A DNA stretch of 64,000 nt from Macrostomum hystrix. Taxonomy: Eukaryota > Animalia > Platyhelminthes. A program made the translations under genes and the position numbers. The stretch's first letter is position 1. Each line of letters opens with the position of its first letter. Positions 430 to 50,600 of this stretch are shown one piece after another. A model generated the notes under the pieces. It did not search any database, was not told the origin of the DNA, and saw only the letters and a list, made by a program, of their open reading frames with translations. Location of the stretch: contig CATNEN010000039.1 of NCBI GenBank assembly GCA_950097015.1, forward strand, positions 6,820,001-6,884,000, given 5' to 3'.

Positions 430-2166
430 TTAGGTAATGCGATAATTGGCGTAGGCGCGATTCTCTTCGCACTCTTTGTGCATCTGCAACTTGGCGTGCA
501 CCGCTTTGCCCTCGTTGTTGCTGGCGTTGACCAGCTCCTTGGCCAGGGATTGGTACAGGTGCACTTTAGTCCCGCGCACGTTGGAAGCCAAGCGAAGAAA
601 CTTCATGGCCCGGAATTGGCTCTCGGATTCGCTCAGCGGGCAAGGCACTTTGTAGAGAAAGCCGCCGCGAAATACGTGCTTAATGATGAGCAGCGGTGCG
701 CAGTTCTCAACCGCTTTATGGATGACGCGAATAGGATCCACCTGCGATTCATCATTTTAGGGCATTATTGATTTTCGGAATCACAAACTAAATAAATACA
801 AAGAAGCAACACACAACAATGTGGACCAGCCAGCGCCAGCTGTGCCAGTCCATGGACTGAAGGGATGAACAAGATAGCTGGACAATATAAGTCCCTCAGT
901 CTTAACTTAATGTTCGAACTCCAGACCTCTACATTAAAAATCCGACGCTCTAGCTTGGCATTGAACAACAACCATTCTTTAGCGAAATTACTAGTGAAAT
1001 GCAGATGAAGCACAAATGCGTAAGTTATACCAGTACTACGAGTATTGTTCCCGCTACGACTTGCTCCTCACACTTGTATTGCGAACTTTCTGCCATCTTG
1101 AGCTGATTTGGAGCCTGCTGGCTCATTATTGAGTACAATCAAGGAGAGAACAACGTAATGGGATTTTAATTTAGGGGTCAACCTGGACAAGAAATGCTCG
1201 GCTCGGATATCAATATGCAGATTATTAATCACAATTACCGTTCTCGTGCAGAAATTAAAATGACAAACTGCACACAGGTTGAGCACTTCAAAGCAGGAAT
1301 TGCTGATATGGTTGATCTGCATAAGTCCTTGCGCACCTAGCTGATGCGCAGATCAAAATTTTTATCTCCTGGACGAGAACTTTCGGTCCAGCCGTGCAGC
1401 TACTGCACGGCGCATCTGAAGGCTGCGTACGTCTGTTCAGTCCATGGACCGGAGCAAACCACATCCAACCTCAAGCACCGAAGATAATGCTGGGGTACCT
1501 ATCTTTCAGCTGGTTGAACTGAAGCAATGCAGAGTTAAGTGTCTTGCTAAAGGACACAAATTGTTCCAGTCGAGTTGGGAATCGAACCCCCGACATTCGA
1601 GTCGTGAGTCCGACGCCCTAACCAGGTTACAAACCGAAATACAGAATGATAAAGCCATTAAAAATTTCCAACAAAGCAAAGTTCACGATGAACCGTTGAG
1701 TAGGTTAGAGTAATCGCGAAAGCAGTAACAATCAACTACTCGCCTCAACAGCCGGCCTCTCCTCCGGCGAAGCGGCATTGCGCCGGCTGATCTGAATGTG
1801 CTTAATTTCTGTCATCATCTGGGTGAAGACGTCGCGCAATTTGTCTCGATAGCCTTCTCGCACCAGATGCCCCGCCAGCTTCTGTACAACAGGATCGTAG
1901 TGCGCGCTGAACAGGTCGTATTTACCGGGTGGCCTGATGGCCTTGGTTCGCCGCTCGTCAGCCTTGGGTATGTGCCTAGTGAGCAGGTGCGGATCCAGCT
2001 GGGCCTGGGTCCAATCTGGGAACGGGCCGCGTTTGCGCACCTTCTTCAATGGCGACTTGTGCCGCACTGGCTGGTTGAAGACGGCCGAGGCGGCGGCGGC
2101 TGCGGCGGTGGTGCGTGACTGGCAGCCAAGAAGACGGCTGGCGCTGCTAAGCAACAGCTGGGACAT
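430..2166 (-). CDS. MRPS7: Mitochondrial ribosomal protein S7 (uS7m); exons 2166-1744 and 741-430, 244 aa
   Basis: Basic, Ser/Ala-rich N-terminal presequence; uS7 motifs PAVE|VDPIRVIHKAVENCAP, VFRGGFLYKVPCPL, HKECEENRAYANYR. The frame is kept only with a GC-AG intron (GAG|GCGAGT ... TCGCAG|GTG). Confidence 0.92.
1425..1632 (-). mobile_element. tRNA-derived SINE (family A) in the MRPS7 intron
   Basis: Minus strand: A-box-like TGGTTAGGGCG, B-box GGTTCGATTCCC, GTGTCCTTTAGCAAGACACTTAAC core and GTCCATGGACTG tail; paralogous to 1-195. Confidence 0.75.
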
Positions 2167-2686
2167 TGTTGGGTTGTAATCCGGGCTAAGCTGCAACTTA
2201 GTGTTTAATTTTAGACTTTGTAATTGATAGACTTAACACTATATACAATCGAAATTTAGAGCATAAAAACTTAACACGGGAAAATTCATAAATAAAACGA
2301 GGTCCCATTTTAGCATTTTATAAGAATGCCTTTTGAGTCAATTCTGCCATTAATTGTACTTATCCTACGCATGTATTTTTTCATTAAAACTTTTAGTAAG
2401 CAACAATTGAACACGGTGTAGTCACAGGGATAAGTTAAGGCTTAAAACACAGACAGAACATTTACTTGACTGAAATTGAAATTGAATTGAAATTTATAAT
2501 TCACAGCAAAATACTACATGGGATTAGTAAGATAAGAATTCTAGCGCATATTTATATTAAACAATTAATAGCAGCAGAGAAATCAACATACAACGTAGGA
2601 CAAATCAACATAGCAGCAGACGGCATTAGGTAAAGGCGTAAAAAAGCTTTAAATCGAGACCTTACATACAGATGATGGTACTTTTA

Positions 2687-3703
2687 AGTTACAGAGGGGT
2701 CACAGATAGGGACAGTTAGTTACAGAGGGGTCACAGATAGGGACAGTTAGTTACAGAGGGGTCACAGTTAGGGACAGTTAGTTACAGAGGGAGTCACAGA
2801 TAGGGACAGTTAGTTACAGAGGGGTCACAGTTAGGGACAGTTAGTTACAGAGGGAGTCACAGATAGGGACAGTTAGTTACAGAGGGAGTCACAGATAGGG
2901 ACAGTTAGTTACAGAGGGAGTCACAGATAGGGACAGTTAGTTACAGAGGGAGTCACAGTTAGGGACAGTTAGTTACAGAGGGGTCACAGATAGGGACAGT
3001 TAGTTACAGAGGGAGTCACAGATAGGGACAGTTAGTTACAGAGGGGTCACAGTTAGGGACAGTTAGTTACAGAGGGGTCACAGTTAGGGACAGTTAGTTA
3101 CAGAGGGGTCACAGTTAGGGACAGTTAGTTACAGAGGGGTCACAGTTAGGGACAGTTAGTTACAGAGGGGTCACAGTTAGGGACAGTTAGTTACAGAGGG
3201 GTCACAGATAGGGACAGTTAGTTACAGAGGGGTCACAGATAGGGACAGTTAGTTACAGAGGGGTCACAGTTAGGGACAGTTAGTTACAGAGGGGTCACAG
3301 ATAGGGACAGTTAGTTACAGAGGGGTCACAGTTAGGGACAGTTAGTTACAGAGGGGTCACAGTTAGGGACAGTTAGTTACAGAGGGGTCACAGTTAGGGA
3401 CAGTTAGTTACAGAGGGGTCACAGATAGGGACAGTTAGTTACAGAGGGGTCACAGTTAGGGACAGTTAGTTACAGAGGGGTCACAGTTAGGGACAGTTAG
3501 TTACAGAGGGGTCACAGTTAGGGACAGTTAGTTACAGAGGGAGTCACAGATAGGGACAGTTAGTTACAGAGGGGTCACAGTTAGGGACAGTTAGTTACAG
3601 AGGGGTCACAGTTAGGGACAGTTAGTTACAGAGGGGTCACAGTTAGGGACAGTTAGTTACAGAGGGGTCACAGTTAGGGACAGTTAGTTACAGAGGGGTC
3701 ACA
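2687..3703. repeat. 31/32-bp minisatellite (AGTTACAGAGGGGTCACAGTTAGGGACAGTT), about 33 copies
   Basis: Directly visible tandem array beginning a few nt downstream of the MED8 stop codon. Confidence 0.97.
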
Positions 3704-3708
3704 TGAGC

Positions 3709-4491
3709 CTACTTAATTCCAACTCCAAAGTTAATAGCGGCCAGCAGCTTAGCCGTATCCTGATCGTTGCTACGCAGAGTCTGGTTGCGCTCTGACTGTT
3801 CATTTTCAAAGTCCGGCTTAGCCTGCTTCAGCGAGTTCATTGCTGTTTCGGCGGCTTTGCGCATCTGCTCGGAGGTCCGGTGAAGGGCTTCAGTACTGGA
3901 GCCGGGCCTTTGAAATTCGTTTCTACGCTGTTCAACGTTCATATCTAGCTTAGTACGCAGATAGTGCGGCACACTGTCGTGGTTAAGGAGGCCGAGACGG
4001 CCCTCGGTGAGGTGTAGAAGCTGTTGATCGAGCTGGGGACTAAGGCCGATAGGCAGCAGGGCGACTTCGTTAAGGCGAAGCTGTTTCTCATTGCGCAGTG
4101 TGCGATGCAGGGCTGACAGCTGGGAAACGCACTCGGCTAGGGAGTTGAGGATCTGGAAAGTGTCCGACCAGAAGGTGCTTACATAAGTACGAGATCTGTA
4201 CGAATTCGTACCCTTGGGCTGAGATTCGAACTCACGACCTCTTGGCCAAAAGTCCATCGGCTTAATCATCACATAGCTTTAAACACTAAATAACAAACAA
4301 TGATAAAAAATGCTCACCTCCGGCCAGGTAGCCGGGTGTCGTTCGTCAACTTTCAGCATCAGCGAGCCTAGAGCTCGACGAATACCGCGCAGCCGATCGA
4401 TCAGCTCGTCTAGGCATTCGTCGACGCTGCGGCCGCCGCTGAAGCCACCCTCACGGCCGGCCAGCTGTTGATGCTGGAACGGATCCGCCAT
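3709..4491 (-). CDS. MED8: Mediator subunit 8; exons 4491-4318 and 4152-3709, 205 aa
   Basis: WPE|ILNSLAECVSQL...LLPIGLSPQLDQQLLHLTEGRLGLLNHDSVPHYLRTKLD matches the Med8 signature (TEGR...HxxVPxxLRTK); canonical GTGAGC/TTCCAG phase-0 intron. Confidence 0.92.
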
Positions 4492-5112
4492 CTGATCCTT
4501 GCTGCTGCTGCTGAAGCTCCTGCTGCTCCTGAGCGTGCTGGTTGGCCTGACGATTCAACAACCGGTGCCGCTTGGGAATGTAGTGCTGCCAGTGGAGAAG
4601 AATTTGCTCGTCGACTTCTCTAGCTAGTCCAGTCTTGGCGATCTCCTTTCGAAACTGCTGGTGCTGCAGCAGATCTAGCAGCTGCAGACAGAACGGGTAC
4701 TTGATGTACTTGACGTAGTCGGCCTCTTTCCAGTACTGCAGATACTGCAGATAGTTGATGAATTCGCGCTTCTCAAAGAAGCGACGCTGAGCTAAGAAGT
4801 TCAAGTAGTTGGGATTGCCGAGGCACTGTACGAATTCTAGCTCGACCTGTCGGTATAGAAAAGCATAGCACGTAAATGCTGCATGTAATTTGAACATACC
4901 CATTGATAGGGTAGCTGAAAATTACAAAAGAACTTTACCTGAAAGCGTTGCCTCTCCTCGTTGTCGGCGCGAGTCTGCTGAGACAGGTGCTGATGATGCG
5001 GCTGCGGCTGCGGCTGGTGATGATGATGATAAGGCGAATAATGATGAGGCAGCGGCAGGGACGGGTGAGGCGGCGGCGGCGGTGGGGGCGGGGGCGGCTG
5101 GTTGGGCTTCAT
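4451..5112 (-). CDS. MED31: Mediator subunit 31 (SOH1); exons 5112-4939 and 4846-4451, 189 aa, with Pro/His-rich N-terminal extension
   Basis: RFQ|VELEFVQCLGNPNYLNFLAQ...YLQYWKEADYVKYIKYPFCL is the SOH1/Med31 signature; GT-AG phase-0 intron. Confidence 0.95.
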
Positions 5113-6017
5113 AAGCCGCGCCGCAAATCAACTCAATTTATTGATGCTGAGCAGAGCAATGACAATAATGATCTCTAAATGCGAATTAAAGGCCGCTGTC
5201 TGAAATGAGAATTGACGATGACGAAGTTACTACTAGCTGTAGTATAGTAAGAAAGGTGTGCAGCTAAATGACGGCATTAATGAAACAGAAGAAGAAAAAA
5301 GTAAACACCGAGACAGAAATGCGCATTTCAAGTTTGCTTATTAAATTGGTAACCACGAGAGAAACAATATAAGCATTGCGTTTGTCATTCTTTCTTCAAG
5401 TCGAAGCCTGACTTACAATTGTGGTTTAATTATTGTTTTATTGAAAAACACAGTTTACAATTATGACATTTTCTGAATTAGGAGCCTAATAGATACAAGT
5501 TACTTAGTGGTGAAAAAAATGGAAAGCGAGTTACTGGATACGTATTTATTCAGGCCATCTCCTGTTTCTCTATTCCAATATCAATTGTCTATTGTCACTG
5601 GCCAAGTACCAAGTCAAAAGCAGAAAATGCGTAACAAACAAAATAGGCCAAGTAATGCATAACATGTGATATTGTACTATAGGGGCGTATGTTTATTTTT
5701 AAAAGGACAACAAGCACGCTTCGCCTTAATTGAACGCACAATGACGACGCATCAAATGGGTAGATTATTAAAATAAAACCGGATCGAAAAACACCGGAAA
5801 GTTGGGCGACTACGGCGTACGGCCCGGCCCGACAGTTAGATTTCGGGACGAGAGAACTCACAACGGACGAATATAAAAAAACTGCAGGACAACAAAACGA
5901 CGTCTTAAAATGGCATTTCGGGCAGCCACGAGACAACTGGAGCAGGAGCAATAAATAAAAACTCATTACTAAATCATATTACTAGCAGATATGGTGGAGT
6001 ACCCCAGGAGAGCTGGC

Positions 6018-6560
6018 TCAGCGACTCCGACTCCTGCTGCCGTCGCTGCTGCGGCCGCCGCTGTAGCGCCGACGCCGATTGTCGGCGTTGTTGTCCGCGG
6101 GGCTGCGGCTGCGCGTGCGGCTTCGGCTGCGCCTGTCCCGCCCGCGGTCCACATCACGATCCCGACTGCGCGAGCGTCGCCGACTAGCTCCGCCGCCGCC
6201 GCCGCCACCGCCGCCATAACGGCCGCCGCGGTCGGGACAGTCGTGGGCGTAGTGCCCGCTGCGGCCGCAGCTGAAGCAGCGATCGTCGCGTCGATCATTG
6301 ACGCCGGGGCCGTTGGTTCGACGCTCCCGTCTGGCTAGTTCCAGTCTCGCGCGGGCGCCGCGAATCTTCGGCGGACTGCGAACGGCGTCCTCGGCGTCGC
6401 GGCGATCGCGAAACGTCACGAAGGCGTAGGTGCCGCGGCCGTGCACCCAGACAGATTCCACTTCGCCGAAGCTGCGCAGAGCGGATTTGATGTCACGCTC
6501 GTCAGCTCCGGTCGGCAGCTCGCCCACGTAGACTCGGCGGCCCATCTCTTCGCGGGACAT
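6018..6560 (-). CDS. SR splicing factor, SRSF7/9G8-like paralogue (RRM + CCHC zinc knuckle + RS), intronless, 180 aa
   Basis: RVYVGELP...YAFVTF RRM, CFSCGRSGHYAHDC knuckle and RS tail. ATG at 6560; the upstream GTG start in the ORF track is unlikely. Confidence 0.88.
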   Translation of the reverse strand: MSREEMGRRVYVGELPTGADERDIKSALRSFGEVESVWVHGRGTYAFVTFRDRRDAEDAVRSPPKIRGARARLELARRERRTNGPGVNDRRDDRCFSCGRSGHYAHDCPDRGGRYGGGGGGGGGASRRRSRSRDRDVDRGRDRRSRSRTRSRSPADNNADNRRRRYSGGRSSDGSRSRSR

Positions 6561-7790
6561 TGTTCTGGCTTGGGGTTTAGTTAACTGATGAATAGAAAAC
6601 ACAGATGAACAGGATAGAAACTGGGCTAACGAATTGACGGCTCGTTTAACTGCGACCACTCGCTAAGCGGCTGAAAAAAGGATTATATTTAAAATATTTA
6701 CCGAACGGTTTGGGGAACTTGCACATTCTGACAGACATTGTGAAACCTAGATACATTACTGACTAATGGATATTACACAGGCGGATGGACGTTAGACAGA
6801 CTAAAATGTAGAGACTGAGGGGCATTACTACAGACACAACACACACTGATATACCTAACAGAATGACATGCATTGCTAACAGCTAGCTTACCTATGTTTA
6901 TTATACTCTTGATATACACAAATGAGTAAAACTAAAAGCTGCCAATCAGATTTCGACAGACAGAGACAAATGGAATTAAACGGTGCAATTGATTATTATT
7001 TTTTACTGTTTTATTAAGGATTAGAGATAAGAAAAGGTGAGCTGAAAACAATCGACTGAGACAGACTTGACACGTTGGGGAGGATGAGTTATTAATAATT
7101 ATGAATAAATAATTTATAAGTGCATTATTATAGCATAGATAGGTTGCTAGTTATAGAAAACTGCTGTTTTGTGTATAAGTAACTTCAGTACGTAGCCTAG
7201 CAATTGTATTTGTTATAAATACAAGTAATTTACTACAAACCATTCGATTTGAAGTTGTAGAAAAGCATAAATTTGGCTGTTATGATTACTCTGGATATAG
7301 TTTTTTAGTTCGGCCTTACTCAATATTATAGATTGCTTTGTTACAGCCAAATGATTCAGCTTTCTATTTGCTTTTCGATATTATGAACAATAAAACAGAT
7401 AAATTACACAACACAAAAGCAAGCAGAATTTTAGTTTTAAAAACGGTGTGGTCAACATAGGACAGACAATAAATTATTACCTAAATGGTAGGTTTGCAGC
7501 CATTAATTGACGACTTGTAGTATTATGAGAATATACAAAAGTCGCCACAGAAATTAACTTAACTAAATAAAACCTGCAAACATTTAAAAGTGGGGATTTC
7601 AGCCGGTCAAAAAACTGCGACAAGAAACAATTGTAGCTCGTATAAAAAAGATAGCCATAGTTTAACCTGCAACCAGTTCTCTTAAACTCGCCGTTTTAGT
7701 AATTATGACATCCTTAAGTCATAGTCCTACATCCATAGACATTAGCCAACTGTTTAACTGCCTTTTCGACGACTTCAAGGGCAATCACGC

Positions 7791-33794: not shown

Positions 33795-34878
33795 AATCAG
33801 TTACAATGGCTAGTAGCTCTAACACTGACACAATTTTATAAGTCTTTGTAATAATGTTGTGTAATTAAAGATTTCGTATTGTCTTGTAAAATTCAAAATA
33901 ACGCCAAGAATAATATCAGAATTTAGGCTAGCAAGAAGCCATTTTTATTTATTATCCAGGCGTTCTTAAAATCTGTTATCCAGAAGGATGTATGACACCT
34001 CATCTAACCCCTTATGGTCCATGGACTGGACTGAAGAAGCCGACGTATTATGAGATTCTAACTCTCGACATCTTGATCAGAAGCAGAAAAGTTGAAATTC
34101 TGAGACAGGAGCTTTTTGTTTGGAATTTTTCATGTTTTAGTTGAAGTCTCCAATTGTTTATTAACTCGCATTGTATTGGGCCTTTCGAAATATTTGAATG
34201 CAATTCTTCAGTTATTCTGGTGTTTGGCAGAATTTCGTCATCGCTAAATGGGGAATATAGCTTTTCCTTTGTGATTCGTCGATTTCCTACTGTATTTTTC
34301 TTTAAAAAATCGATTTCATACAAAATTCTAATTGTAATAATCCTATACTATCTGTACAGATCTATACTATCACCAGACTGTTGTCTTCGTCATTCAAAAC
34401 TAATAAAACGCTTTATATACTACTTGCCCATGCAACTAAATTCAGATTTTTGGGTGAGGGATGGTGTCTGTAAAAATTTGGCTCTGGTGCAGTAAATGCC
34501 TGGTTTTGTATATTTTGTACAAAATGTCATTAAAAACACGGATAAAACTTTTGATTTCTTTAAACTAGAGTAAAACAATATAATATTCTTTTTTGTTATT
34601 CTGTTGCGTCTAAATACATTTTAAAGAATCAAATTAATTTCGTTTTGAGTGTATATGCATAATGCACCATTGAGTGCGGGTGTTTTATCGATCTAAATTT
34701 ACCTATAAATCAAGCACCTGACTTCAACCTGTTCGTTGTTTTGCTTAGACTGGACTAATGCAATGCGTGAAAAGTAGAACACAACCTAGACGTTTGGGAC
34801 TACTCTGAGTAGCAGAAACTTGCTCAATAAACATAAACCACAGCGTGAGAAAGCATTTCAAAGAAAGCTTCGCGCACA

Positions 34879-37830
34879 AGATGTTGATGGAAGAGTAATG
34901 ACCGATTCCCTGATGTAGATGGAAGAGTAATGACTGATTCCCTGATGTAGATGGGAGAGTAATGACTGATTCCCTGATGTAGATGGAAGAGTAATGACTG
35001 ATTCCCTGATGTAGATGGAAGAGTAATGAACGATTCCCTGATGTAGATGGGCGAGTAATGACCGATTCCCTGATGTAGATGGGAGAGTAATGACTGATTC
35101 CCTGATGTAGATGGAAGAGTAATGACTGATTCCCTGATGTAGATGGAAGAGTAATGAACGATTCCCTGATGTAGATGGGAGAGTAATGAACGATTCCCTG
35201 ATGTAGATGGGCGAGTAATGACCGATTCCTTGATGTAGATGGAAGAGTAATGACCGATTCTCTGATGTAGATGGAAGAGTAATGACCGATTCCCTGATGT
35301 AGATGGAAGAGTAATGACCGGTTCCCTGATGTAGATGGAAGAGTAATGACCGGTTCCCTGATGTAGATGGAAGAGTAATGACTGATTCCCTGATGTAGAT
35401 GGGAGAGTAATGACCGATTCCCTGATGTAGATGGGAGAGTAATGACCGATTCCCTGATGTAGATGGGAGAGTAATGACCGATTCCCTGATGTAGATGGAA
35501 GAGTAATGACTGATTCCCTGATGTAGATGGGAGAGTAATGACCGATTCCCTGATGTAGATGGGAGAGTAATGACCGATTCCCTGATGTAGATGGAAGAGT
35601 AATGACCGGTTCCCTGATGTAGATGGAAGAGTAATGACTGATTCCCTGATGTAGATGGGAGAGTAATGACCGATTCCCTGATGTAGATGGGAGAGTAATG
35701 ACCGATTCCCTGATGTAGATGGGAGAGTAATGACCGATTCCCTGATGTAGATGGAAGAGTAATGACTGATTCCCTGATGTAGATGGGAGAGTAATGACCG
35801 ATTCCCTGATGTAGATGGGAGAGTAATGACCGATTCCCTGATGTAGATGGGAGAGTAATGACCGATTCCCTGATGTAGATGGAAGAGTAATGACCGATTC
35901 CCTGATGTAGATGGGAGAGTAATGACCGATTCCCTGATGTAGATGGGCGAGTAATGACCGATTCCCTGATGTAGATGGAAGAGTAATGACTGATTCCCTG
36001 ATGTAGATGGGCGAGTAATGACCGATTCCTTGATGTAGATGGAAGAGTAATGACCGATTCCCTGATGTTGATGGAAGAGTAATGACTGATTCCCTGATGT
36101 AGATGGGCGAGTAATGACCGATTCCTTGATGTAGATGGAAGAGTAATGACCGATTCCCTGATGTAGATGGAAGAGTAATGACCGGTTCCCTGATGTAGAT
36201 GGAAGAGTAATGACCGATTCCCTGATGTAGATGGGAGAGTAATGACCGATTCCCTGATGTAGATGGGCGAGTAATGACCGATTCCCTGATGTAGATGGAA
36301 GAGTAATGACCGATTCCCTGATGTAGATGGAAGAGTAATGACCGGTTCCCTGATGTAGATGGAAGAGTAATGACCGATTCCCTGATGTAGATGGGAGAGT
36401 AATGACCGATTCCCTGATGTAGATGGGCGAGTAATGACCGATTCCCTGATGTAGATGGAAGAGTAATGACCGATTCCCTGATGTAGATGGGAGAGTAATG
36501 ACCGATTCCCTGATGTAGATGGGCGAGTAATGACCGATTCCTTGATGTAGATGGAAGAGTAATGACCGATTCCCTGATGTAGATGGAAGAGTAATGACCG
36601 ATTCCCTGATGTAGATGGGAGAGTAATGACCGATTCCCTGATGTAGATGGGAGAGTAATGACCGATTCCCTGATGTAGATGGGAGAGAAATGACCGATTC
36701 CCTGATGTAGATGGGCGAGTAATGACCGATTCCCTGATGTAGATGGAAGAGTAATGACTGATTCCCTGATGTAGATGGGAGAGTAATGACCGATTCCCTG
36801 ATGTAGATGGGAGAGTAATGACTGATTCCCTGATGTAGATGGGAGAGTAATGACCGATTCCCTGATGTAGATGGGAGAGTAATGACCGATTCCCTGATGT
36901 AGATGGGAGAGTAATGACCGATTCCCTGATGTAGATGGAAGAGTAATGACTGATTCCCTGATGTAGATGGGAGAGAAATGACCGATTCCCTGATGTAGAT
37001 GGAAGAGTAATGACTGATTCCCTGATGTAGATGGAAGAGTAATGAACGATTCCCTGATGTAGATGGGAGAGAAATGACCGATTCCCTGATGTAGATGGGC
37101 GAGTAATGACCGATTCCCTGATGTAGATGGAAGAGTAATGACCGATTCCCTGATGTAGATGGGCGAGTAATGACCGATTCCCTGATGTAGATGGAAGAGT
37201 AATGACTGATTCCCTGATGTAGATGGGAGAGTAATGACCGATTCCCTGATGTAGATGGGAGAGTAATGACCGATTCCCTGATGTAGATGGGAGAGTAATG
37301 ACCGATTCCCTGATGTAGATGGGAGAGTAATGACCGATTCCCGGATGTAGATGGAAGAGTAATGACCGATTCCCTGATGTAGATGGGAGAGTAATGACCG
37401 ATTCCCGGATGTAGATGGAAGAGTAATGACCGATTCCCTGATGTAGATGGAAGAGTAATGACCGATTCCCTGATGTAGATGGGAGATTAATGACCGATTC
37501 CCTGATGTAGATGGGAGAGTAATGACCGATTCCCTGATGTAGATGGGAGAGTAATGACTGATTCCCTGATGTAGATGGGAGAGTAATGACCGATTCCCTG
37601 ATGTAGATGGGAGAGTAATGACCGATTCCCGGATGTAGATGGAAGAGTAATGACCGATTCCCTGATGTAGATGGGAGATTAATGACCGATTCCCTAATGT
37701 AGATGGGAGAGTAATGACCGATTCTTGGATGTAGATGGGCGAGTATTGACCGATTCCCGGATGTAGATGGGAGAGTAATGACCGATTCCCGGATGTACAT
37801 GTAGATGGGAGAGTAATGACCGATTCCCTG
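34879..37830. repeat. 32-bp minisatellite (GATGTAGATGGGAGAGTAATGACCGATTCCCT), about 92 copies
   Basis: Highly homogeneous tandem array; the 980-aa ORF has a 32-aa period (= 3 units), as expected for an artefact. Confidence 0.98.
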
Positions 37831-38615
37831 GCGAAAAAAATTGGCGAAGTTTACAAGACAACTCGCATTTTCAGTGACAGTCTAACCAACAAACTGAGCA
37901 ATAAAGTCCAAATGCTTGCAGGAAATCGGCACAAAAAATGTAACAGCAAAGCAGAAAATTTTGGGCAATCGATTTTAGCCGAAACCGACAGTGCAGATGT
38001 AGCGAATAAACATGATTTCACTGGACCGGAAACTCGCCCACACTTGCTTCTGCTGCCACGTAAGCAACTACAGTACTCCGGCAGCAGCTCTAAGCAGCAG
38101 CTGGACTTTCTTGGGCGAGAGTGTAAATTTCTTGCTGAATTTGCAAAAAAATTGTCGATCTGTGGGAAATATCATAAAATAGTTTTTAAAACAAACTTAA
38201 AGAAACTTGTCGACTTCAGCATTTTTTTTCTACGAGTCGTAAATGACCCTCGTGGCTGCCTTTTGCATCGCCAAAAACAGACTTCTCGTGTTGCAAGTTT
38301 TTTATTGCTCAAAATCAACTTTTAGATTTTCTGTTTTACAACTTCATCCGATCAGCCAAATTGCCGAAATGCCTTGGCAACAGCTGTCGCTGGAGACTAG
38401 CATTTGGAGTATAAGAATGGCCGGCGCCTCGCATCGCAGCTCAATTCCCCTGCTAAGAGGTCTCAATTCCTATTCGAGAATTTATTCGGATTTTAAAAAA
38501 GCAGCTGAAATCGCAGTGAATCAAAGCGCATTGTTGATAGATCCATTGACTCCGACTTCTGAAGGCCACCATTTCGGCGAACACAGCCAGTTGAACTTCT
38601 CGAAGTCGACGAAGG

Positions 38616-41663: not shown

Positions 41664-44600
41664 GGAAAAAGTGGCGGTTCAAAGCGTAGCGCTTCAACTA
41701 GACGGTCGAGCAGCGGTGAGAAATATTTATAAACTGCAAGCTGCACGTGTGCTTTGAGCTACTTTGACAATCGATCTGAAAGCCATCAATAATTAATCAA
41801 CAAAAATTCTTCAGGTGCTGCCAACGATGAGCTTGTGACCGAAATCACGGAGGAGACAATCATTGAAGACGCGGATGCTTCGGGCGGCAAGAGACGTCGA
41901 TCGACCTCTAAACGGCGCAAGTCGGGCGGAAGCAGAGGTCGGAAGACTCGAGGACGATCTGCCGGCAAGAGCAGCGGATCGTCAGGTAAATGAATATAAT
42001 TAGCAGTACAGAGACTATTTCATGTCAAGAGTGCACAGAATTACAAAAAACTTTTATTACAATACTTGACAGACGATGCGCTTGTGACCGAAATCACGGA
42101 GGAGACAATCATTGAAGACGCGGATGCTTCGGGCGGCAAGAGACGTCGATCGACCTCTAAACGGCGCAAGTCGGGCGGAAGCAGAGGTCGGAAGACTCGA
42201 GGACGATCTGCCGGCAAGAGCAGCGGATCGTCAGGTAAATGAATATAATTAGCAGTACAGAGACTATTTCATGTCAAGAGTGCACAGAATTACAAAAAAC
42301 TTTTATTACAATACTTGACAGACGATGCGCTTGTGACCGAAATCATCGAGGAGACAATCATTGAAGACGCGGATGCTTCGGCCGGCAAGAGACGTCGATC
42401 GACCTCTAAACGGCGCAAGTCGGGCGGAAGCAGAGGTCGGAAGACTCGAGGACGATCTGCCGGCAAGAGCAGCGGATCGTCAGGTAAATGAATATAATTA
42501 GCAGTACAGAGACTATTTCATGTCAAGAGTGCACAGAATTACAAAAAACTTTTATTACAATACTTGACAGACGATGCGCTTGTGACCGAAATCACGGAGG
42601 AGACAATCATTGAAGACGCGGATGCTTCGGGCGGCAAGAGACGTCGTTCGACCTCTAAACGGCGCAAGTCGGGCGGAAGCAGAGGTCGGAAGACTCGAGG
42701 ACGATCTGCCGGCAAGAGCAGCGGATCGTCAGGTAAATGAATATAATTAGCAGTACAGAGACTATTTCATGTCAAGAGTGCACAGAATTACAAAAAACTT
42801 TTATTACAATACTTGACAGACGATGCGCTTGTGACCGAAATCATCGAGGAGACAATCATTGAAGACGCGGATGCTTCGGGCGGCAAGAGACGTCGTTCGA
42901 CCTCTAAACGGCGCAAGTCGGGCGGAAGCAGAGGTCGGAAGACTCGAGGACGATCTGCCGGCAAGAGCAGCGGATCGTCAGGTAAATGAATATAATTAGC
43001 AGTACAGAGACTATTTCATGTCAAGAGTGCACAGAATTACAAAAAACTTTTATTACAATACTTGACAGACGATGCGCTTGTGACCGAAATCATCGAGGAG
43101 ACAATCATTGAGGAAGATGCTAGCAGTTCTGGTAATTACAAATGAAATAAAATGCCAGCCATCAGCCCGACCGGTCACTGATTCACTTACAATTGCAATT
43201 TGATTTTCAGACGGTAATCGAAAACGTTCAAACTCAAGGACACGTCGCATTGGTCGCAGCGGTAGAAAATCTGGACAGTTGGGTAGAAGGGCAGGTAACT
43301 GATTCATGTGCTTATTGCCGATAGGCTCTCACAATAGAGGCAGGATGCAGTAAAATATTTTCGTCGATAAAAAATTTTTGTTACAATCTAGTTTTTTTCC
43401 ACCACAAACCCATATCTCAGATGACGAGACAATCACCGAAATCACAGACGAGACAGTACTTCACGATGTTGATGGCGAAAAAACAGGTAAAAACGCATTA
43501 GTGTTCTATGAATAACTAAAATAAAAACATTTGGATTTAAACAGCTTGAAACACACCAAAAAAGTTCACAAGAAAAACAAACGCAAAAAAACATCCGCAG
43601 AAAACAAGAAAAGAAGCACATCAGGCGTCCAAAACTTCAAAAACGGTAGCAAAACTCGAGCCCGCAAGGCCAGGAAGAGCTCAAAGAGAGCCCGAAAGAC
43701 CAGGAAGAGCACAAAGAGACGCGCTCGCAAGGCCAGGAAGAGCACTAAGAGAGCCCGCAAGGCCAGGAAGAGCTCACAGAGAGCCCGCAAAGCCAGGAAA
43801 AGCACAAAGAGACGCGCTCGCAAGGCCAGGAAGAGCACAAAGAGACCCGCCCGCAAGGCCAGGAAGAGCACAAAGAGACGCGCCCGCAAGGCCAGGAAGA
43901 GCACAAAGAGACGCGCCCGCAAGGCCAGGAAGAGCACAAAGAGACGCGCCCGCAAGGCCAGGAAGAGCACAAAGAGACGCGCCCGCAAGGCCAGGAAGAG
44001 CAGCAAGAGACGCGCTCGCAAGGCCAGGAAGAGCAGCAAGAGACCCGCCCGCAAGGCCAGGAAGAGCACTAAGAGAGCCCGCAAAACCAGGAAGAGCACA
44101 AAGAGACGCGCCCGCAAAGCCAGAAAGAGCACAAAGAGACGCGCCCGCAAGGCCAGGAAGAGCACAAGGAGACGCGCCCGCAAGGCCAGCAAGAGCAGCA
44201 AGAGACGCGCCCGCAAGGCCAGGAAGAGCAGTAAGAGAGCCCGCAAAGCCAGGAGGAGCAGTAAGAGAGCCCGCAAGGCCAGGAAGAGCACAAAGAGACG
44301 CGCCCGCAAGGCCAGGAAGAGCACAAAGAGACGCGCTCGCAAGGCCAGGAAGAGCACAAGGAGACGCGCTCGAAAGGCCAGGAAGAGCAGTAAGAGAGCC
44401 CGCAAGGCCAGGAAGAGCAGCAAGAGACGCGCCCGCAAGGCCAGGAAGAGCACAAAGAGACGCGCACGCAAGGCCAGAAAGGGCACAAAGAGACGCGCCC
44501 GCAAAGCCAGGAAGAGCAAAAAGGGACGCGCTCGCAAGGCCAGGAAGAGCAGCAAGAGACGCGCTCGCAAGGCCAGGAAGAGCAGCAAGAGACCCGCCCG

Positions 44601-47600
44601 CAAGGCCAGGAAGAGCACTAAGAGAGCCCGCAAATCCAGGAAGAGCACAAAGAGACGCGCCCGCAAGGCCAGGAAGAGCACAAAGAGACGCGCCCGCAAA
44701 GCCAGAAAGAGCACAAAGAGACGCGCCCGCAAGGCCAGGAAGAGCACAAGGAGACGCGCCCGCAAGGCCAGCAAGAGCAGCAAGAGACGCGCCCGCAAGG
44801 CCAGGAAGAGCAGTAAGAGAGCCCGCAAAGCCAGGAGGAGCAGTAAGAGAGCCCGCAAGGCCAGGAAGAGCACAAAGGGACGCGCACGCAAGGCCAGGAA
44901 GAGCACAAAGAGACGCGCCCGCAAGGCCAGGAAGAGCACAAAGAGACGCGCCCGCAAGGCCAGGAAGAGCACAAAGAGACGCGCTCGCAAGGCCAGGAAG
45001 AGCACAAAGAGACGCGCTCGAAAGGCCAGGAAGAGCACAAAGAGACGCGCTCGCAAGGCCAGGAAGAGCAGCAAGAGACGCGCTCGCAAGGCCAGGAAGA
45101 GCACAAAGAGACGCGCCCGCAAGGCCAGGAAAAGCACAAAGAGACGCGCCCGCAAGGCCAGGAAGAGCACAAAGAGACGCGCTCGAAAGGCCAGGAAGAG
45201 CAGAAAGAGAGCCCGCAAGGCCAGGAAGAGCAGCAAGAGACGCGCTCTGAAGGCCAGGAAGAGCACAAAGAGACGCGCCCGCAAAGCCAGGAAGAGCACA
45301 AAGAGACGCGCCCGCAAGGCCAGGAAGAGCAGCAAGAGACGCGCTCGCAAGGCCAGGAAGAGCAGCAAGAGACCCGCCCGCAAGGCCAGGAAGAGCACAA
45401 AGGGACGCGCCCGCAAGGCCAGGAAGAGCACAAAGAGACCCGCCCGCAAGACAAGGAAGAGCACAAAGAGACGCGCCCGCAAGGCCAGGAAGAGCACAAA
45501 GAGACGCGCCCGCAAGGCCAGGAAGAGCAGCAAGAGACGTGCTCGAAAGGCCAGGAAAAGCACTAAGAGACGCGACCGCAAGCCTAGGAAGAGCAGCAAG
45601 AAACCCGCCCGCAAGGCCAGGAAGAGCACTAAGAGAGCCCGCAAATCCAGGAAGAGCACAAAGAGACGCGCCCGCAAAGCCAGAAAGAGCACAAAGAGAC
45701 GCGCCCGCAAGGCCAGGAAGAGCACAAGGAGACGCGCCCGCAAGGCCAGCAAGAGCAGCAAGAGACGCGCCCGCAAGGCCAGGAAGAGCAGTAAGAGAGC
45801 CCGCAAGGCCAGGAAGAGCAGCAAGAGACGCGCCCGCAAGGCCAGAAAGAGCACAAAGAGACGCGCCCGCAAAGCCAGGAAGAGCACAAAGAGACGCGCC
45901 CGCAAGGCCAGGAAGAGCAGCAAGAGACGCGCTCGCAAGGCCAGGAAGAGCAGCAAGAAACCCGCCCGCAAGGCCAGGAAGAGCACTAAGAGAGCCCGCA
46001 AATCCAGGAAGAGCACAAAGAGACGCGCCCGCAAAGCCAGGAAGAGCACAAAGAGACGCGCCCGCAAGGCCAGGAAGAGCACAAGGAGACGCGCCCGCAA
46101 GGCCAGCAAGAGCAGCAAGAGACGCGCCCGCAAGGCCAGGAAGAGCAGTAAGAGAGCCCGCAAAGCCAGGAGGAGCAGTAAGAGAGCCCGCAAGGCCAGG
46201 AAGAGCACAAAGGGACGCGCACGCAAGGCCAGGAAGAGCACAAAGAGACGCGCCCGCAAGGCCAGGAAGAGCACGAAGAGACGCGCCCGCAAAGCCAGGA
46301 AGAGCACAAAGAGACGCGCCCGCAAGGCCAGGAAGAGCACAAAGAGACGCGCCCGCAAGGCCAGGAAGAGCACAAGGAGACGCGCCCGCAAGGCCAGCAA
46401 GAGCAGCAAGAGACGCGCCCGCAAGGCCAGGAAGAGCAGTAAGAGAGCCCGCAAAGCCAGGAGGAGCAGTAAGAGAGCCCGCAAGGCCAGGAAGAGCACA
46501 AAGAGACGCGCCCGCAAAGCCAGGAAGAGCACAAAGAGACGCGCTCGCAAGGCCAGGAAGAGCACGAAGAGACGCGCCCGCAAAGCCAGGAAGAGCACAA
46601 AGAGACGCGCCCGCAAGGCCAGGAAGAGCACTAAGAGACGCGACCGCAAGCCCAGGAAGAGCACAAAGAGACGCGCCCGCAAAGCCAGGAAGAGCACAAA
46701 GAGACGCGCCCGCAAAGCCAGGAAGAGCAGCAAGAGACGCGCTCGCAAGGCCAGGAAGAGCAGCAAGAAACCCGCCCGCAAGGCCAGGAAGAGCACTAAG
46801 AGAGCCCGCAAATCCAGGAAGAGCACAAAGAGACGCGCCCGCAAAGCCAGGAAGAGCACAAAGAGACGCGCCCGCAAAGCCAGGAAGAGCAGCAAGAGAC
46901 GCGCTCGCAAGGCCAGGAAGAGCAGCAAGAAACCCGCCCGCAAGGCCAGGAAGAGCACTAAGAGAGCCCGCAAATCCAGGAAGAGCACAAAGAGACGCGC
47001 CCGCAAAGCCAGAAAGAGCACAAAGAGGCGCGCCCGCAAGGCCAGGAAGAGCACAAGGAGACGCGCCCGCAAGGCCAGCAAGAGCAGCAAGAGACGCGCC
47101 CGCAAGGCCAGGAAGAGCAGTAAGAGAGCCCGCAAGGCCAGGAAGAGCACGAAGAGACGCGCCCGCAAAGCCAGGAAGAGCACAAAGAGACGCGCCCGCA
47201 AGGCCAGGAAGAGCACAAAGAGAGCCCGCAAGGCTAGCAAGAGCAGCAAGAGACGCGCCCGCAAGGCCAGAAAAAGCACAAAGAGACGCGACCGCAAGGC
47301 CAGGAAGAGCACAAAGAGAGCCCGCAAGGCTAGCAAGAGCACAAAGAGACGCGACCGCAAGGCCAGGAAGAGCAGCAAGAGACGCGCCCGCAAGGCCAGG
47401 AAGAGCACAAAGAGACGCGCCCGCAAGGCCAGGAAGAGCACAAAGAGACGCGACCGCAAGGCCAGGAAGAGCACAAAGAGACGCGCCCGCAAGGCCAGGA
47501 AGAGCACTAAGAGACGCGCTCGCAAGGCCAGGAAGAGCACGAAGAGACGCGCCCGCAAAGCCAGGAAGAGCACAAAGAGACGCGCCCGCAAGGCCAGGAA

Positions 47601-50600
47601 GAGCACTAAGAGACCCGCCCGCAAGGCCAGGAAGAGCACAAAGAGACGCGCCCGCAAGGCCAGGAAGAGCAGCAAGAGACGCGCTCGAAAGGCCAGGAAA
47701 AGCACTAAGAGACGCGCCCGCAAGGCCAGGAAGAGCACAAAGAGACGCGCACGCAAGGCCAGAAAGGGCACAAAGAGACGCGCCCGCAAAGCCAGGAAGA
47801 GCACAAAGAGACGCGCTCGCAAGGCCAGGAAGAGCACAAAGAGACGCGCTCGAAAGGCCAGGAAGAGTAGTAAGAGAGCCCGCAAGGCCAGGAAGAGCAG
47901 CAAGAGACGCGCCCGCAAGGCCAGGAAGAGCACAAAGAGACGCGCACGCAAGGCCAGAAAGGGCACAAAGAGACGCGCCCGCAAAGCCAGGAAGAGCACA
48001 AAGAGACGCGCCCGCAAAGCCAGGAAGAGCACAAAGAGACGTGCCCGCAAGGCCAGGAAGAGCACAAAGAGACGCGCTCGAAAGGCCAGGAAGAGCACAA
48101 AGAGACGCGCCCGCAAAGCCAGGAAGAGCACAAAGAGACGCGCCCGCAAAGCCAGGAAGAGCACAAAGAGACGCGCTCGCAAGGCCAGGAAGAGCACAAA
48201 GAGACGCGCTCGAAAGGCCAGGAAGAGCAGTAAGAGAGCCCGCAAGGCCAGGAAGAGCACAAAGAGACGCGCTCGCAAGGCCAGGAAGAGCACAAAGAGA
48301 CGCGCCCGCAAGGCCAGGAAGAGCACAAAGAGACGCGCTCGCAAGGCCAGGAAGAGCACAAAGAGACGCGCTCGAAAGGCCAGGAAGAGCAGTAAGAGAG
48401 CCCGCAAGGCCAGGAAGAGCACAAAGAGACGCGCTCGCAAGGCCAGGAAGAGCACAAAGAGACGCGCTCGAAAGGCCAGGAAGAGCAGTAAGAGAGCCCG
48501 CAAGGCCAGGAAGAGCACAAAGAGACGTGCTCGCAAGGCCAGGAAGAGCACAAAGAGACGCGCTCGCAAGGCCAGGAAGAGCACAAAGAGACGCGCCCGC
48601 AAGGCCAGGAAGAGCACAAAGAGACGCGCTCGCAAGGCCAGGAAGAGCACAAAGAGACGCGCTCGAAAGGCCAGGAAGAGCAGTAAGAGAGCCCGCAAGG
48701 CCAGGAAGAGCAGTAAGAGAGCCCGCAAGGCCAGTAAGAGCACGAAGAGACGCGCCCGCAAAGCCAGGAAGAGCAGCAAGAGACGCGCTCGCAAGGCCAG
48801 GAAGAGCACGAAGAGACGCGCCCGCAAAGCCAGGAAGAGCACAAAGAGACGCGCCCGCAAGGCCAGGAAGAGCACAAAGAGACGCGCCCGCAAGGCCAGG
48901 AAGAGCACTAAGAGACCCGCCCGCAAGGCCAGGAAGAGCACAAAGAGACGCGCCCGCAAGGCCAGGAAGAGCAGCAAGAGACGCGCCCGCAAGGCCAGGA
49001 AGAGCACAAAGAGACGCGCACGCAAGGCCAGAAAGGGCACAAAGAGACGCGCCCGCAAAGTCAGGAAGAGCACAAAGAGACGCGCCCGCAAGGCCAGGAA
49101 GAGCACAAAGAGAGCCCGCAAGGCTAGCAAGAGCAGCAAGAGACGCGCCCGCAAGGCCAGAAAAAGCACAAAGAGACGCGCACGCAAGGCCAGAAAGGGC
49201 ACAAAGAGACGCGCCCGCAAAGCCTGGAAGAGCACAAAGAGACGCGCTCGCAAGGCCAGGAAGAGCACAAAGAGACGCGCTCGAAAGGCCAGGAAGAGCA
49301 GCAAGAGACGCGCTCGCAAGGCCAGGAAGAGCACAAAGAGACGCGCCCGCAAGGCCAGGAAGAGCACTAAAAGACGCGACCGCAAGCCCAGGAAGAGCAC
49401 AAAGAGACGCGCACGCAAGGCCAGAAAGGGCACAAAGAGACGCGCCCGCAAAGCCAGGAAGAGCACAAAGAGACGTGCCCGCAAGGCCAGGAAGAGCACA
49501 AAGAGACGCGCTCGAAAGGCCAGGAAGAGCACAAAGAGACGCGCCCGCAAAGCCAGGAAGAGCACAAAGAGACGCGCCCGCAAAGCCAGGAAGAGCACAA
49601 AGAGACGCGCTCGCAAGGCCAGGAAGAGCACAAAGAGACGCGCTCGAAAGGCCAGGAAGAGCAGTAAGAGAGCCCGCAAGGCCAGGAAGAGCACAAAGAG
49701 ACGCGCTCGCAAGGCCAGGAAGAGCACAAAGAGACGCGCCCGCAAGGCCAGGAAGAGCACAAAGAGACGCGCTCGCAAGGCCAGGAAGAGCACAAAGAGA
49801 CGCGCTCGAAAGGCCAGGAAGAGCAGTAAGAGAGCCCGCAAGGCCAGGAAGAGCACAAAGAGACGCGCTCGCAAGGCCAGGAAGAGCACAAAGAGACGCG
49901 CTCGAAAGGCCAGGAAGAGCAGTAAGAGAGCCCGCAAGGCCAGGAAGAGCACAAAGAGACGTGCTCGCAAGGCCAGGAAGAGCACAAAGAGACGCGCTCG
50001 CAAGGCCAGGAAGAGCACAAAGAGACGCGCCCGCAAGGCCAGGAAGAGCACAAAGAGACGCGCTCGCAAGGCCAGGAAGAGCACAAAGAGACGCGCTCGA
50101 AAGGCCAGGAAGAGCAGTAAGAGAGCCCGCAAGGCCAGGAAGAGCAGTAAGAGAGCCCGCAAGGCCAGGAAGAGCACGAAGAGACGCGCCCGCAAAGCCA
50201 GGAAGAGCAGCAAGAGACGCGCTCGCAAGGCCAGGAAGAGCACGAAGAGACGCGCCCGCAAAGCCAGGAAGAGCACAAAGAGACGCGCCCGCAAGGCCAG
50301 GAAGAGCACAAAGAGACGCGCCCGCAAGGCCAGGAAGAGCACTAAGAGACCCGCCCGCAAGGCCAGGAAGAGCACAAAGAGACGCGCCCGCAAGGCCAGG
50401 AAGAGCAGCAAGAGACGCGCCCGCAAGGCCAGGAAGAGCACAAAGAGACGCGCACGCAAGGCCAGAAAGGGCACAAAGAGACGCGCCCGCAAAGTCAGGA
50501 AGAGCACAAAGAGACGCGCCCGCAAGGCCAGGAAGAGCACAAAGAGAGCCCGCAAGGCTAGCAAGAGCAGCAAGAGACGCGCCCGCAAGGCCAGAAAAAG

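What the first reader, a model, noticed from the sequence alone, without database searches (positions are those of the whole stretch)
4451..4491. MED31 and MED8 coding sequences overlap by 41 nt on the same strand
Seen: MED31 ends ...GGA TCA GAT GGC GGA...CCG TGA (stop 4453-4451), while MED8 starts at the ATG at 4491 in the +1 frame inside it (TCAG|ATG). There is no room for a promoter, 3' UTR or poly(A) site. Two subunits of the same complex (Mediator middle and head modules) are physically interlocked, which is very unusual in an animal. Inference, possible mechanisms: (a) a bicistronic mRNA with termination-reinitiation; (b) SL trans-splicing to an AG inside the MED31 CDS, giving mutually exclusive mRNAs; (c) +1 frameshifting, or a 1-nt assembly error hiding a MED31-MED8 fusion joined by the poly-Gln linker.
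Basis: partly seen in the sequence, partly recalled or inferred. Interest (0 to 1): 0.85.

Follow-up and report, generated by a model that had tools for sequence, protein, structure and literature searches.

The report
Overlapping MED31-MED8 two-gene flatworm messenger
In this Macrostomum flatworm the genes for two Mediator subunits, MED31 and MED8, really do overlap by 41 bases. Both lie on one spliced, leader-capped RNA contig, and MED8's start is the very next AUG after MED31's, so ribosomes probably reach it by scanning past the first gene, though this is not proven.

Summary
On the minus strand MED31 (ATG 5112, two exons, TGA 4453-4451) and MED8 (ATG 4491, two exons, TAG 3711-3709) overlap by 41 nt, with MED8 in the +1 frame.

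An assembly error is excluded at contig level. One DNA contig and RNA contigs from three studies and two labelled organisms show the same letters with no indel.

In two RNA data sets a single contig with both introns removed runs from the Macrostomum spliced leader, joined at 5200/5199, through MED31 and MED8 to just past the MED8 stop. There is no AATAAA-like signal after the MED31 stop.

New here: on that spliced RNA the 613 nt from the leader junction to the MED8 ATG hold one ATG, the MED31 start, which sits in a weak context (cttATGa). The introns and MED8 are not depleted.

- **Best reading (about 0.5):** an unresolved bicistronic mRNA, with MED8 reached by leaky scanning or delayed reinitiation.
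- **Main rival (about 0.3):** leader trans-splicing at an acceptor inside the MED31 coding sequence (TTCCAG|4473 or CAG|4491). The 5' ends of MED8 mRNAs could not be seen.

The scan's notes report similar overlapping pairs elsewhere in this genome. I re-checked MED9/GEMIN6 and found the same ATG desert. This is a new member of a known kind, of moderate interest.

The parts
5200..5205 (-). Spliced-leader acceptor of MED31 (TTTCAG; the first exon base is 5199)
   Evidence: The X2 RNA contig carries 24 non-genomic letters beyond 5200 that equal positions 11-34 of the Macrostomum spliced leader. The leader is encoded at 28 other places in the genome, followed by GTAAG. The site fits the published acceptor motif [T/C]TNCAG.
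5113..5199 (-). MED31 5' UTR. It is ATG-free. Read from the leader's own AUG it forms a 24-codon uORF that stops at 5130-5128, 15 nt before the MED31 AUG.
4939..5112 (-). MED31 exon 1 (58 codons, Pro/His/Gln-rich). The start codon 5112-5110 sits in the context cttATGa.
   Evidence: (joint 4844/4937, cut +2)
4847..4938 (-). MED31 intron (GT..AG, 92 nt, holds 4 ATG)
   Evidence: It is removed in the RNA contigs of X2, X6 and X9. ATG count.
4451..4846 (-). MED31 exon 2 (131 codons plus TGA 4453-4451). The Med31 domain covers residues 1-89, followed by a Gln-rich tail.
4451..4491 (-). The 41-nt overlap: the last 13 sense codons and the stop of MED31, and the first 13.7 codons of MED8 in the +1 frame
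   Evidence: Identical in DNA and RNA contigs.
4318..4491 (-). MED8 exon 1 (58 codons). The start codon 4491-4489 sits in the context cagATGg. It is the second ATG on the spliced RNA.
4474..4479 (-). Candidate internal leader acceptor TTCCAG|CAT. It fits the M. lignano motif, and the leader's AUG would be in the MED8 frame (M-HQQLAGRE...). Its use is not shown.
4153..4317 (-). MED8 intron (GT..AG, 165 nt, 4 ATG). It holds a dispersed repeat at about 4211-4256.
3709..4152 (-). MED8 exon 2 (147 codons plus TAG 3711-3709)
   Evidence: 83% identical to M. lignano MED8
2687..3703 (.). 31-bp tandem repeat (32.6 copies) starting 6 nt after the MED8 stop. The RNA contigs end at its edge (about 3677).

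Best explanation
MED31 and MED8 are two separate, conserved genes carried on one spliced-leader-capped, fully spliced bicistronic mRNA. The pair sits in a co-directional cluster: SRSF7-like, MED31, MED8, a satellite, then MRPS7-like. MED31 is translated from the first genomic AUG, which lies in a weak context. MED8, which begins 41 nt before the MED31 stop in the +1 frame, is translated by 40S subunits that reach its AUG without starting at MED31. They could do so by leaky scanning, or by delayed reinitiation after the 24-codon uORF opened by the leader's own AUG. This is possible because no other AUG lies in between. Shown: the overlap; the absence of any indel; both introns; the leader on the MED31 5' end; one contig across both genes; the single upstream ATG. 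Inferred: that single mature molecules carry both ORFs, and that MED8 is translated from them.
For:: the contigs X2 record 9 (1291 nt) and X6 record 15 (1271 nt) each cover 5200-4937, 4844-4318 and 4152-3680 with both introns removed and no differences. The X2 contig carries the leader at its 5' end. The X9 contig bridges 4653-4052; no AATAAA-like signal occurs in MED8 exon 1 or its intron, so a MED31 mRNA has nowhere obvious to end before the MED8 3' end; the 613 nt from the leader junction to the MED8 ATG hold one ATG, the MED31 start, against about 6 expected. The two introns hold 4 each, and MED8 holds 7 more; dinucleotide shuffles give a mean of 5.6 ATG and none of 5000 reached zero; none of 1345 windows of 526 nt in 13 non-repetitive ORFs of this window is ATG-free. 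MED31 context cttATGa (pyrimidine at -3, no G at +4); MED8 context cagATGg; a second overlapping pair in this genome, MED9/GEMIN6, has the same layout. Between L017:1100 and 1937 its only ATGs are the two start codons, and the upstream start is again weak (cacATGc); a weak ORF1 context plus AUG depletion before ORF2 is the experimentally tested signature of leaky-scanning bicistrons in green algae. Leaky scanning has also been shown for a Drosophila bicistronic pair.
Against: Logan contigs come from a k-mer graph. Two separate mRNAs that share the 41-nt overlap could be merged into one contig, and rare leader-MED8 junctions would be dropped. 65 loose ends were not shown. The ATG desert is weaker under stricter nulls. 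With the protein fixed, synonymous-codon permutation gives zero out-of-frame ATG 44% of the time, and 17 of 267 MED31 orthologues also lack an internal Met. The conservative joint P is therefore about 0.03. The MED8 AUG itself lacks a purine at -3. In M. lignano about 15% of genes are estimated to lie in trans-spliced operons. That makes internal trans-splicing a natural alternative. No Kozak consensus was derived for this species.
Confidence: 0.5

Rival explanations
1. An operon resolved inside a coding sequence. The primary transcript is trans-spliced to the leader at an acceptor within the last 14-20 codons of MED31: TTCCAG|4473, with the leader's AUG supplying the start, or GATCAG|4491. 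This gives a monocistronic MED8 mRNA. Any one transcript would then yield either MED31 or MED8, as proposed for intercistron-less operons of Ciona and SL1-type operons of C. elegans.
For:: about 30% of M. lignano genes are leader-trans-spliced and about 15% lie in operons. MED31 itself receives the leader 62 nt after the apparent end of the upstream gene's RNA contig (5263), which is operon-like. TTCCAG at 4479-4474 fits the [T/C]TNCAG acceptor motif, and every AG from 4498 to 4450 would put the leader's AUG in the MED8 frame; the MED8 of a third species (P0002) begins M-LPAGRE, exactly where CAG|CTG lies here. That would fit a leader-donated Met; intercistron-less operons with mutually exclusive processing, and the flatworm leader's 3' ATG as a possible start codon, are both described.
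Against: No leader-bearing loose end at 4473 or 4491 appears among the listed contig ends, and the contigs of three runs pass straight through the site. That is weak evidence, because contigs drop rare forms. The pyrimidine tract before 4473 is poor (0.54) compared with the MED31 acceptor. GATCAG|ATG does not fit the motif. This reading does not explain why the whole MED31 mRNA lacks further ATGs. In known intercistron-less operons the upstream poly(A) site abuts the acceptor. Here the upstream stop codon lies downstream of it, and no poly(A) signal is present.
Confidence: 0.3
2. Termination-reinitiation. Ribosomes finish MED31 at 4451, and a fraction of 40S subunits move back 41 nt and restart at the MED8 AUG.
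For: Both ORFs lie on one RNA contig. Post-termination 40S subunits can move in both directions over short distances (cited). From my own knowledge, not checked here: pneumovirus M2-1/M2-2 restarts about 30 nt upstream of the stop.
Against: Reinitiation after a 189-codon ORF is normally very inefficient. No unusual structure lies around the site (z -0.82). This model does not need ATG depletion over the whole upstream ORF.
Confidence: 0.07
3. MED8 has its own transcription start inside MED31 (its intron or exon 2), giving an independent, leaderless mRNA. The contig across both genes would then be an assembly merge of overlapping transcripts.
For: k-mer contigs cannot separate overlapping transcripts (caveat stated).
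Against: There is no room for a promoter outside coding sequence. The contigs are fully spliced and uniform. Nothing in the data points to an internal start.
Confidence: 0.06
4. A MED31-MED8 fusion protein made by +1 ribosomal frameshifting (for example at CCG-UGA-G, where skipping the U enters the MED8 frame), or hidden by a sequencing error.
For: The frames are +1 apart, and a shift at the stop codon would be in phase with MED8.
Against: Independent DNA and RNA contigs show no indel. There is no stimulatory structure. M. lignano annotates MED8 as a separate 204-aa protein with the same N-terminus. No fusion appeared among MED31 relatives of any length.
Confidence: 0.02

Closest known systems
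Leaky-scanning bicistronic nuclear genes (green algae, PMC11892635; Drosophila sloth1/sloth2, doi 10.1101/2020.07.01.182485)
   Same: Two conserved ORFs lie on one capped mRNA. The ORF1 start context is weak, and AUG is depleted before ORF2. The two products belong to the same complex or pathway.
   Different: Here the ORFs overlap by 41 nt instead of being separated by 5-180 nt. ORF1 is long for the class at 189 codons (in the two algae analysed the median ORF1 is 291-600 nt; the sloth ORFs encode 61-79 aa). The mRNA carries a trans-spliced leader whose own AUG opens a uORF. Translation of ORF2 has not been tested.
Intercistron-less SL operons (Ciona; C. elegans SL1-type operons; PMC1488885, PMC12582326)
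   Same: The genes are co-directional with no intercistronic DNA in a leader-trans-splicing animal. Processing to the upstream or the downstream mRNA would be mutually exclusive.
   Different: In those operons the upstream poly(A) site abuts the downstream acceptor, and the coding sequences do not overlap. Here the upstream stop lies 41 nt beyond the downstream start, no poly(A) signal is present, and leader addition to MED8 is not shown.
Canonical Macrostomum and other flatworm SL operons (PMC8629364, PMC5730564, PMC12582326)
   Same: The leader is the same 35 nt. The MED31 acceptor fits the motif and lies about 62 nt after the upstream gene's RNA end, close to the typical spacing of about 100 bp.
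   Different: The MED31-MED8 junction has a negative spacing. All 45 analysed S. mansoni pairs had at least 5 bp between them.
MED9/GEMIN6 overlapping pair in the same genome (L017; scan note s1-300433)
   Same: A Mediator subunit comes first, and the downstream ORF starts before the upstream stop (17 nt). No ATG lies between the two starts, and the first AUG has a weak context.
   Different: The partner is not a Mediator subunit. I did not check RNA evidence for that locus.

Membership tests
MED31 (Pfam PF05669) and MED8 (Pfam PF10232) | Domain match above the curated cut-off | tested here: met
   Med31 119 bits (cut-off 25). Med8 82.5 bits on exon 2 (cut-off 28.3), with exon 1 matching profile positions 8-45 weakly. 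83% identity to M. lignano MED8.
Leaky-scanning bicistronic mRNA | Both ORFs on one mature, capped, spliced mRNA | tested here: inconclusive
   One leader-bearing, intron-free contig spans both ORFs in X2 and X6. Contigs cannot prove single molecules.
Leaky-scanning bicistronic mRNA | Weak initiation context at ORF1 | tested here: met
   cttATGa has a pyrimidine at -3 and no G at +4. This is judged by the general eukaryotic rule. No species consensus was derived.
Leaky-scanning bicistronic mRNA | AUG depletion between the ORF1 start and the ORF2 start | tested here: met
   0 ATG in 526 nt of coding sequence and 0 in the 87-nt 5' UTR. P ranges from below 0.001 (shuffles; window ORFs) to about 0.03 (protein-aware null).
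Leaky-scanning bicistronic mRNA | ORF2 output falls when the ORF1 start is strengthened or an AUG is added upstream | not testable with these tools
   This needs reporter assays or ribosome profiling.
SL-resolved operon | The downstream gene's mRNA begins with the spliced leader | tested here: inconclusive
   The leader is seen on MED31 at 5200.
SL-resolved operon | The upstream mRNA is cleaved and polyadenylated before, or at, the downstream acceptor | tested here: not met
   The MED31 stop (4451) lies downstream of every productive acceptor except GAG|4449. No AATAAA-like hexamer occurs from 4491 to 4153.
Termination-reinitiation | A structured or 18S-complementary element upstream of the stop/start region | tested here: inconclusive
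   The minimum free energy of 4560-4370 is not different from shuffles (z -0.82). 18S complementarity was not tested.

The most novel reading that the evidence does not exclude
Macrostomum keeps a small class of polycistrons that are not resolved by trans-splicing. In these, two full-size conserved genes overlap and are translated in a fixed ratio from one leader-capped mRNA. The leader's own AUG, a short uORF, a weak first start and an AUG-free first ORF would together set how many ribosomes reach the second gene. Mediator subunits (MED31-MED8, MED9-GEMIN6) would be recurrent members.
Probability: 0.2. Interest if true: 0.7.

Novelty: new member of a known kind. Interest (0 to 1): 0.5.

Why it matters
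Animals that trans-splice a leader are thought to turn polycistronic transcripts into monocistronic mRNAs. A pair of housekeeping genes that cannot be separated without destroying one of them shows a limit of that rule. Either the worm translates a true bicistronic mRNA, or it must sacrifice one message to make the other. Both genes encode subunits of one complex, so the layout could fix their ratio. In practice, such pairs cause missing or fused gene models. No Macrostomum MED31 protein of 72-229 residues was found in the word-indexed protein collection, and no close relative appeared at any length among the 50%-identity cluster representatives, although MED8 was found. The pair also gives a compact natural cassette for two-gene expression in Macrostomum transgenesis.

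Tried and rejected
- **Assembly error or fusion:** rejected, because the DNA and RNA contigs are identical to the window.
- **Paralogous copies for comparison:** none. The locus is single-copy.
- **tRNA in the MED8 intron:** none. The repeated piece at 4211-4256 is a dispersed repeat.
- **Macrostomum MED31 proteins, to compare the tail and Met content:** none found in either protein library. The best hits were about 60% identical proteins of other animals. The third homologous-protein search was left unused because no query by reference could reach longer proteins.
- **Supplementary tables and full text for Mlig020072, MED31 and MED8:** nothing.
- **The '.g2' suffix of the M. lignano name as evidence for a second gene in a transcription unit:** dropped, because the suffix may number paralogues.
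- **Whole-window ATG-free windows as a null:** rejected, because satellites make 17-21% of windows ATG-free. Non-repetitive ORFs were used instead.
- **YAE1/TGS1 pair (L018):** looked at, but its exon structure was not resolved, so the scan note on it was not verified.
- **RNA structure around the overlap:** unremarkable.
- **Exon joining:** all protein searches were made exon by exon, by reference. The exons were never joined into a full-length model for any search. ATG counts were made per exon, with the junction letters checked separately.

Full report
**Observation.**
Both genes lie on the minus strand.

- MED31 starts at ATG 5112 and has a 58-codon Pro/His/Gln-rich first exon (5112-4939). 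A 92-nt GT..AG intron follows (4938-4847). The second exon (4846-4451) carries the Med31 domain (Pfam 7e-35) and a Gln-rich tail that ends at TGA 4453-4451.
- MED8 starts at ATG 4491, one base out of register (+1). Its first exon is 4491-4318, its intron is 165 nt (4317-4153), and its second exon is 4152-3709 (Pfam Med8 4.4e-23).
- The MED8 frame is closed 22 codons upstream of its ATG. The only later in-frame ATG (4359) would remove the conserved N-terminal helix.
- The M. lignano MED8 protein (P0001, 83% identical) begins with the same 16 residues.

**Is the sequence right?**
The locus is single-copy in the 220-Mb assembly, so paralogues could not be compared. Public runs were found and four were laid on 3680-5400.

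- A DNA contig of X1 covers 4213-5400 with no difference. X1 may be the source sample, so it is not independent.
- X2 (a different study, 2020) and X6 each give one contig lying on 5200-4937, 4844-4318 and 4152-3680. Both introns are removed, and there are no other letters and no gaps. These runs are therefore cDNA, whatever their label.
- A contig of X9, labelled as another organism, bridges 4653-4318 and 4152-4052 without a difference.
- Nothing is left out or put in near the overlap. A 1-nt error hiding a fusion is excluded at contig level.

**The leader.**
The X2 contig continues beyond 5200 with 24 letters that are not in the window. Read on the gene's strand they are positions 11-34 of the 35-nt M. 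lignano spliced leader printed in PMC8629364. The same 25-mer occurs 28 times elsewhere in this genome, many copies in 11.6-kb tandem units and none near the window. One copy read in full shows the whole leader followed by GTAAG. MED31 is thus trans-spliced at TTTCAG|5199, which fits the published acceptor motif [T/C]TNCAG.

**Gene neighbourhood.**
An RNA contig of the upstream gene ends at 5263, 62 nt before this acceptor. That gene has RRM and zinc-knuckle domains and is SRSF7-like (6659-6018). Downstream of MED8 lie a 1-kb satellite of 31-bp units (2687-3703) and then an S7-type, probably mitochondrial, ribosomal protein gene. All are on the same strand, so the neighbourhood looks like a Macrostomum operon.

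**What is special at the MED31/MED8 junction.**
In canonical flatworm operons the upstream mRNA is polyadenylated some tens to a hundred bases before the downstream acceptor. Here there is no such space. I also see no AATAAA-like hexamer from the MED8 ATG to the end of its intron. A MED31 mRNA must therefore run on into MED8, most simply to the MED8 3' end. That agrees with the single spliced contig.

A scan note on another locus (s1-344276) prompted me to count ATG triplets.

| Region | Length | ATG count |
|---|---|---|
| 5' UTR (5199-5113) | 87 nt | 0 |
| MED31 exon 1 | 174 nt | 1 (the start codon) |
| MED31 exon 2 up to the MED8 ATG | 355 nt | 0 |
| MED31 intron | 92 nt | 4 |
| MED8 intron | 165 nt | 4 |
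| MED8 after its own start | 615 nt | 7 |

No ATG forms across the exon junction (AG|GT). On the spliced RNA the MED8 AUG is therefore the very next AUG after the MED31 AUG.

The strength of this depends on the null model.

- Dinucleotide shuffles give a mean of 5.6 ATG, and none of 5000 reached zero.
- In 13 non-repetitive ORFs of this window, none of 1345 windows of 526 nt is ATG-free.
- Stricter nulls weaken it. With the protein fixed, permuting synonymous codons gives no out-of-frame ATG 44% of the time. In addition, 17 of 267 MED31 relatives lack an internal Met. A conservative joint probability is about 0.03.

The MED31 AUG sits in cttATGa, a weak context by the general -3/+4 rule. The MED8 AUG sits in cagATGg.

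The leader's own AUG opens a 24-codon uORF that stops 15 nt before the MED31 AUG. Ribosomes that translate this uORF would have little distance in which to become competent again before the MED31 AUG. The next AUG they meet is that of MED8.

**A replicate.**
The scan's notes name an overlapping MED9/GEMIN6 pair in this genome (s1-300433). I located it independently. I confirmed both identities by Pfam and counted ATGs.

- MED9 (L017:1366-1686) and GEMIN6 (L017:1670-2191) overlap by 17 nt.
- Between L017:1100 and 1937 the only ATGs on that strand are the two start codons.
- The first start is again weak (cacATGc).
- That locus may have been flagged because of this very feature, so it is supportive but not unbiased.

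I could not resolve the exon structure of the YAE1/TGS1 pair and did not verify that note.

**Mechanism.**
A weak first start plus AUG depletion before the second ORF is the experimentally tested signature of leaky-scanning bicistronic genes in green algae (PMC11892635). Leaky scanning has also been shown for a Drosophila bicistronic pair whose products act on the same complex. I therefore favour an unresolved bicistronic mRNA with MED8 reached by leaky scanning or delayed reinitiation (about 0.5).

The main rival (about 0.3) is leader trans-splicing inside the MED31 coding sequence.

- TTCCAG at 4479-4474 fits the acceptor motif, and the leader's AUG would then read M-HQQLAGRE in the MED8 frame.
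- A third species' MED8 (P0002) starts M-LPAGRE at the position of CAG|CTG here.
- Flatworm leaders are known to end in a potentially initiating ATG.
- Processing would then be mutually exclusive, as argued for Ciona operons without intercistronic DNA and for C. elegans SL1-type operons. Unlike those operons, the coding sequences themselves would overlap here.

Against the rival:

- Contigs of three runs pass through the site and no leader-bearing end is listed there. This is weak evidence, because contigs drop rare forms and 65 loose ends were not shown.
- The pyrimidine tract is poor.
- The ATG desert would be unexplained.

The other readings are unlikely. Termination-reinitiation, an internal promoter and +1 frameshifting have no positive support. 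The local fold is ordinary (z -0.82).

**Limits.**

- Only contigs could be laid, and they cannot show 5' ends, 3' ends or single molecules.
- No Macrostomum MED31 protein was found in either protein library. This might itself reflect one-ORF-per-transcript annotation of a bicistron, but that is a guess.
- All searches with the gene models were made exon by exon, by reference. The joined full-length proteins were never built for a search.
- Another agent's note names the species as M. hystrix. I did not verify this. The leader and the 83% identity to M. lignano MED8 show only that it is a Macrostomum.

**Verdict.**
The overlap is real and well supported, and it is not an artefact. It is best filed as a new member of the known kind 'bicistronic animal mRNA', here with overlapping full-size ORFs on a leader-capped message in an operon-rich flatworm. 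How MED8 is expressed remains open. Interest is moderate, at 0.5.

Noticed in passing
window 2687-3703: A 31-bp tandem repeat (32.6 copies, 97% matches) begins 6 nt after the MED8 stop codon. The RNA contigs stop at its edge, so the MED8 3' end and poly(A) site were not seen.
   Followed up: partly
window 4211-4256 (MED8 intron): A dispersed repeat of about 45 nt has 30 or more copies across the genome at 82-97% identity, and the DNA contig depth spikes there. ARAGORN finds no tRNA in it.
   Followed up: partly
G000 C15, C17, C42 (for example C17:2765-120870); L013:1491-1525: The spliced-leader RNA gene occurs 28 times, many copies spaced 11.6-11.7 kb apart in tandem units. The leader is identical to that of M. 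lignano and is followed by GTAAG.
   Followed up: partly
window 5263-6659 and 430-2196, minus strand: An SRSF7-like gene (RRM plus zinc knuckle) has an RNA contig ending at 5263, 62 nt before the MED31 leader acceptor. An S7-type ribosomal protein gene lies downstream of the satellite. Together with MED31 and MED8 they form a possible four-gene co-directional unit.
   Followed up: partly
L017:1366-2191 (G000:C37, about 3448516-3449341): MED9 (106 aa) and GEMIN6 (173 aa) overlap by 17 nt. The two start codons are the only ATGs over more than 800 nt of that strand.
   Followed up: yes
window 5128-5199: On the trans-spliced MED31 mRNA the leader's terminal AUG opens a 24-codon uORF that ends 15 nt before the MED31 start codon.
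   Followed up: partly
window 34748-37881, 43508-52014, 59212-63999: Several kilobases of low-complexity satellite are open in several frames and almost free of ATG (gaps of up to 8 kb). Any ATG-based statistic has to exclude them.
   Followed up: no
window 4997 (MED31 exon 1): The RNA contig of the run labelled organism B lacks 6 nt in the His/Gln-coding repeat but is otherwise identical over the covered stretches. It is probably a very close relative or the same species.
   Followed up: no
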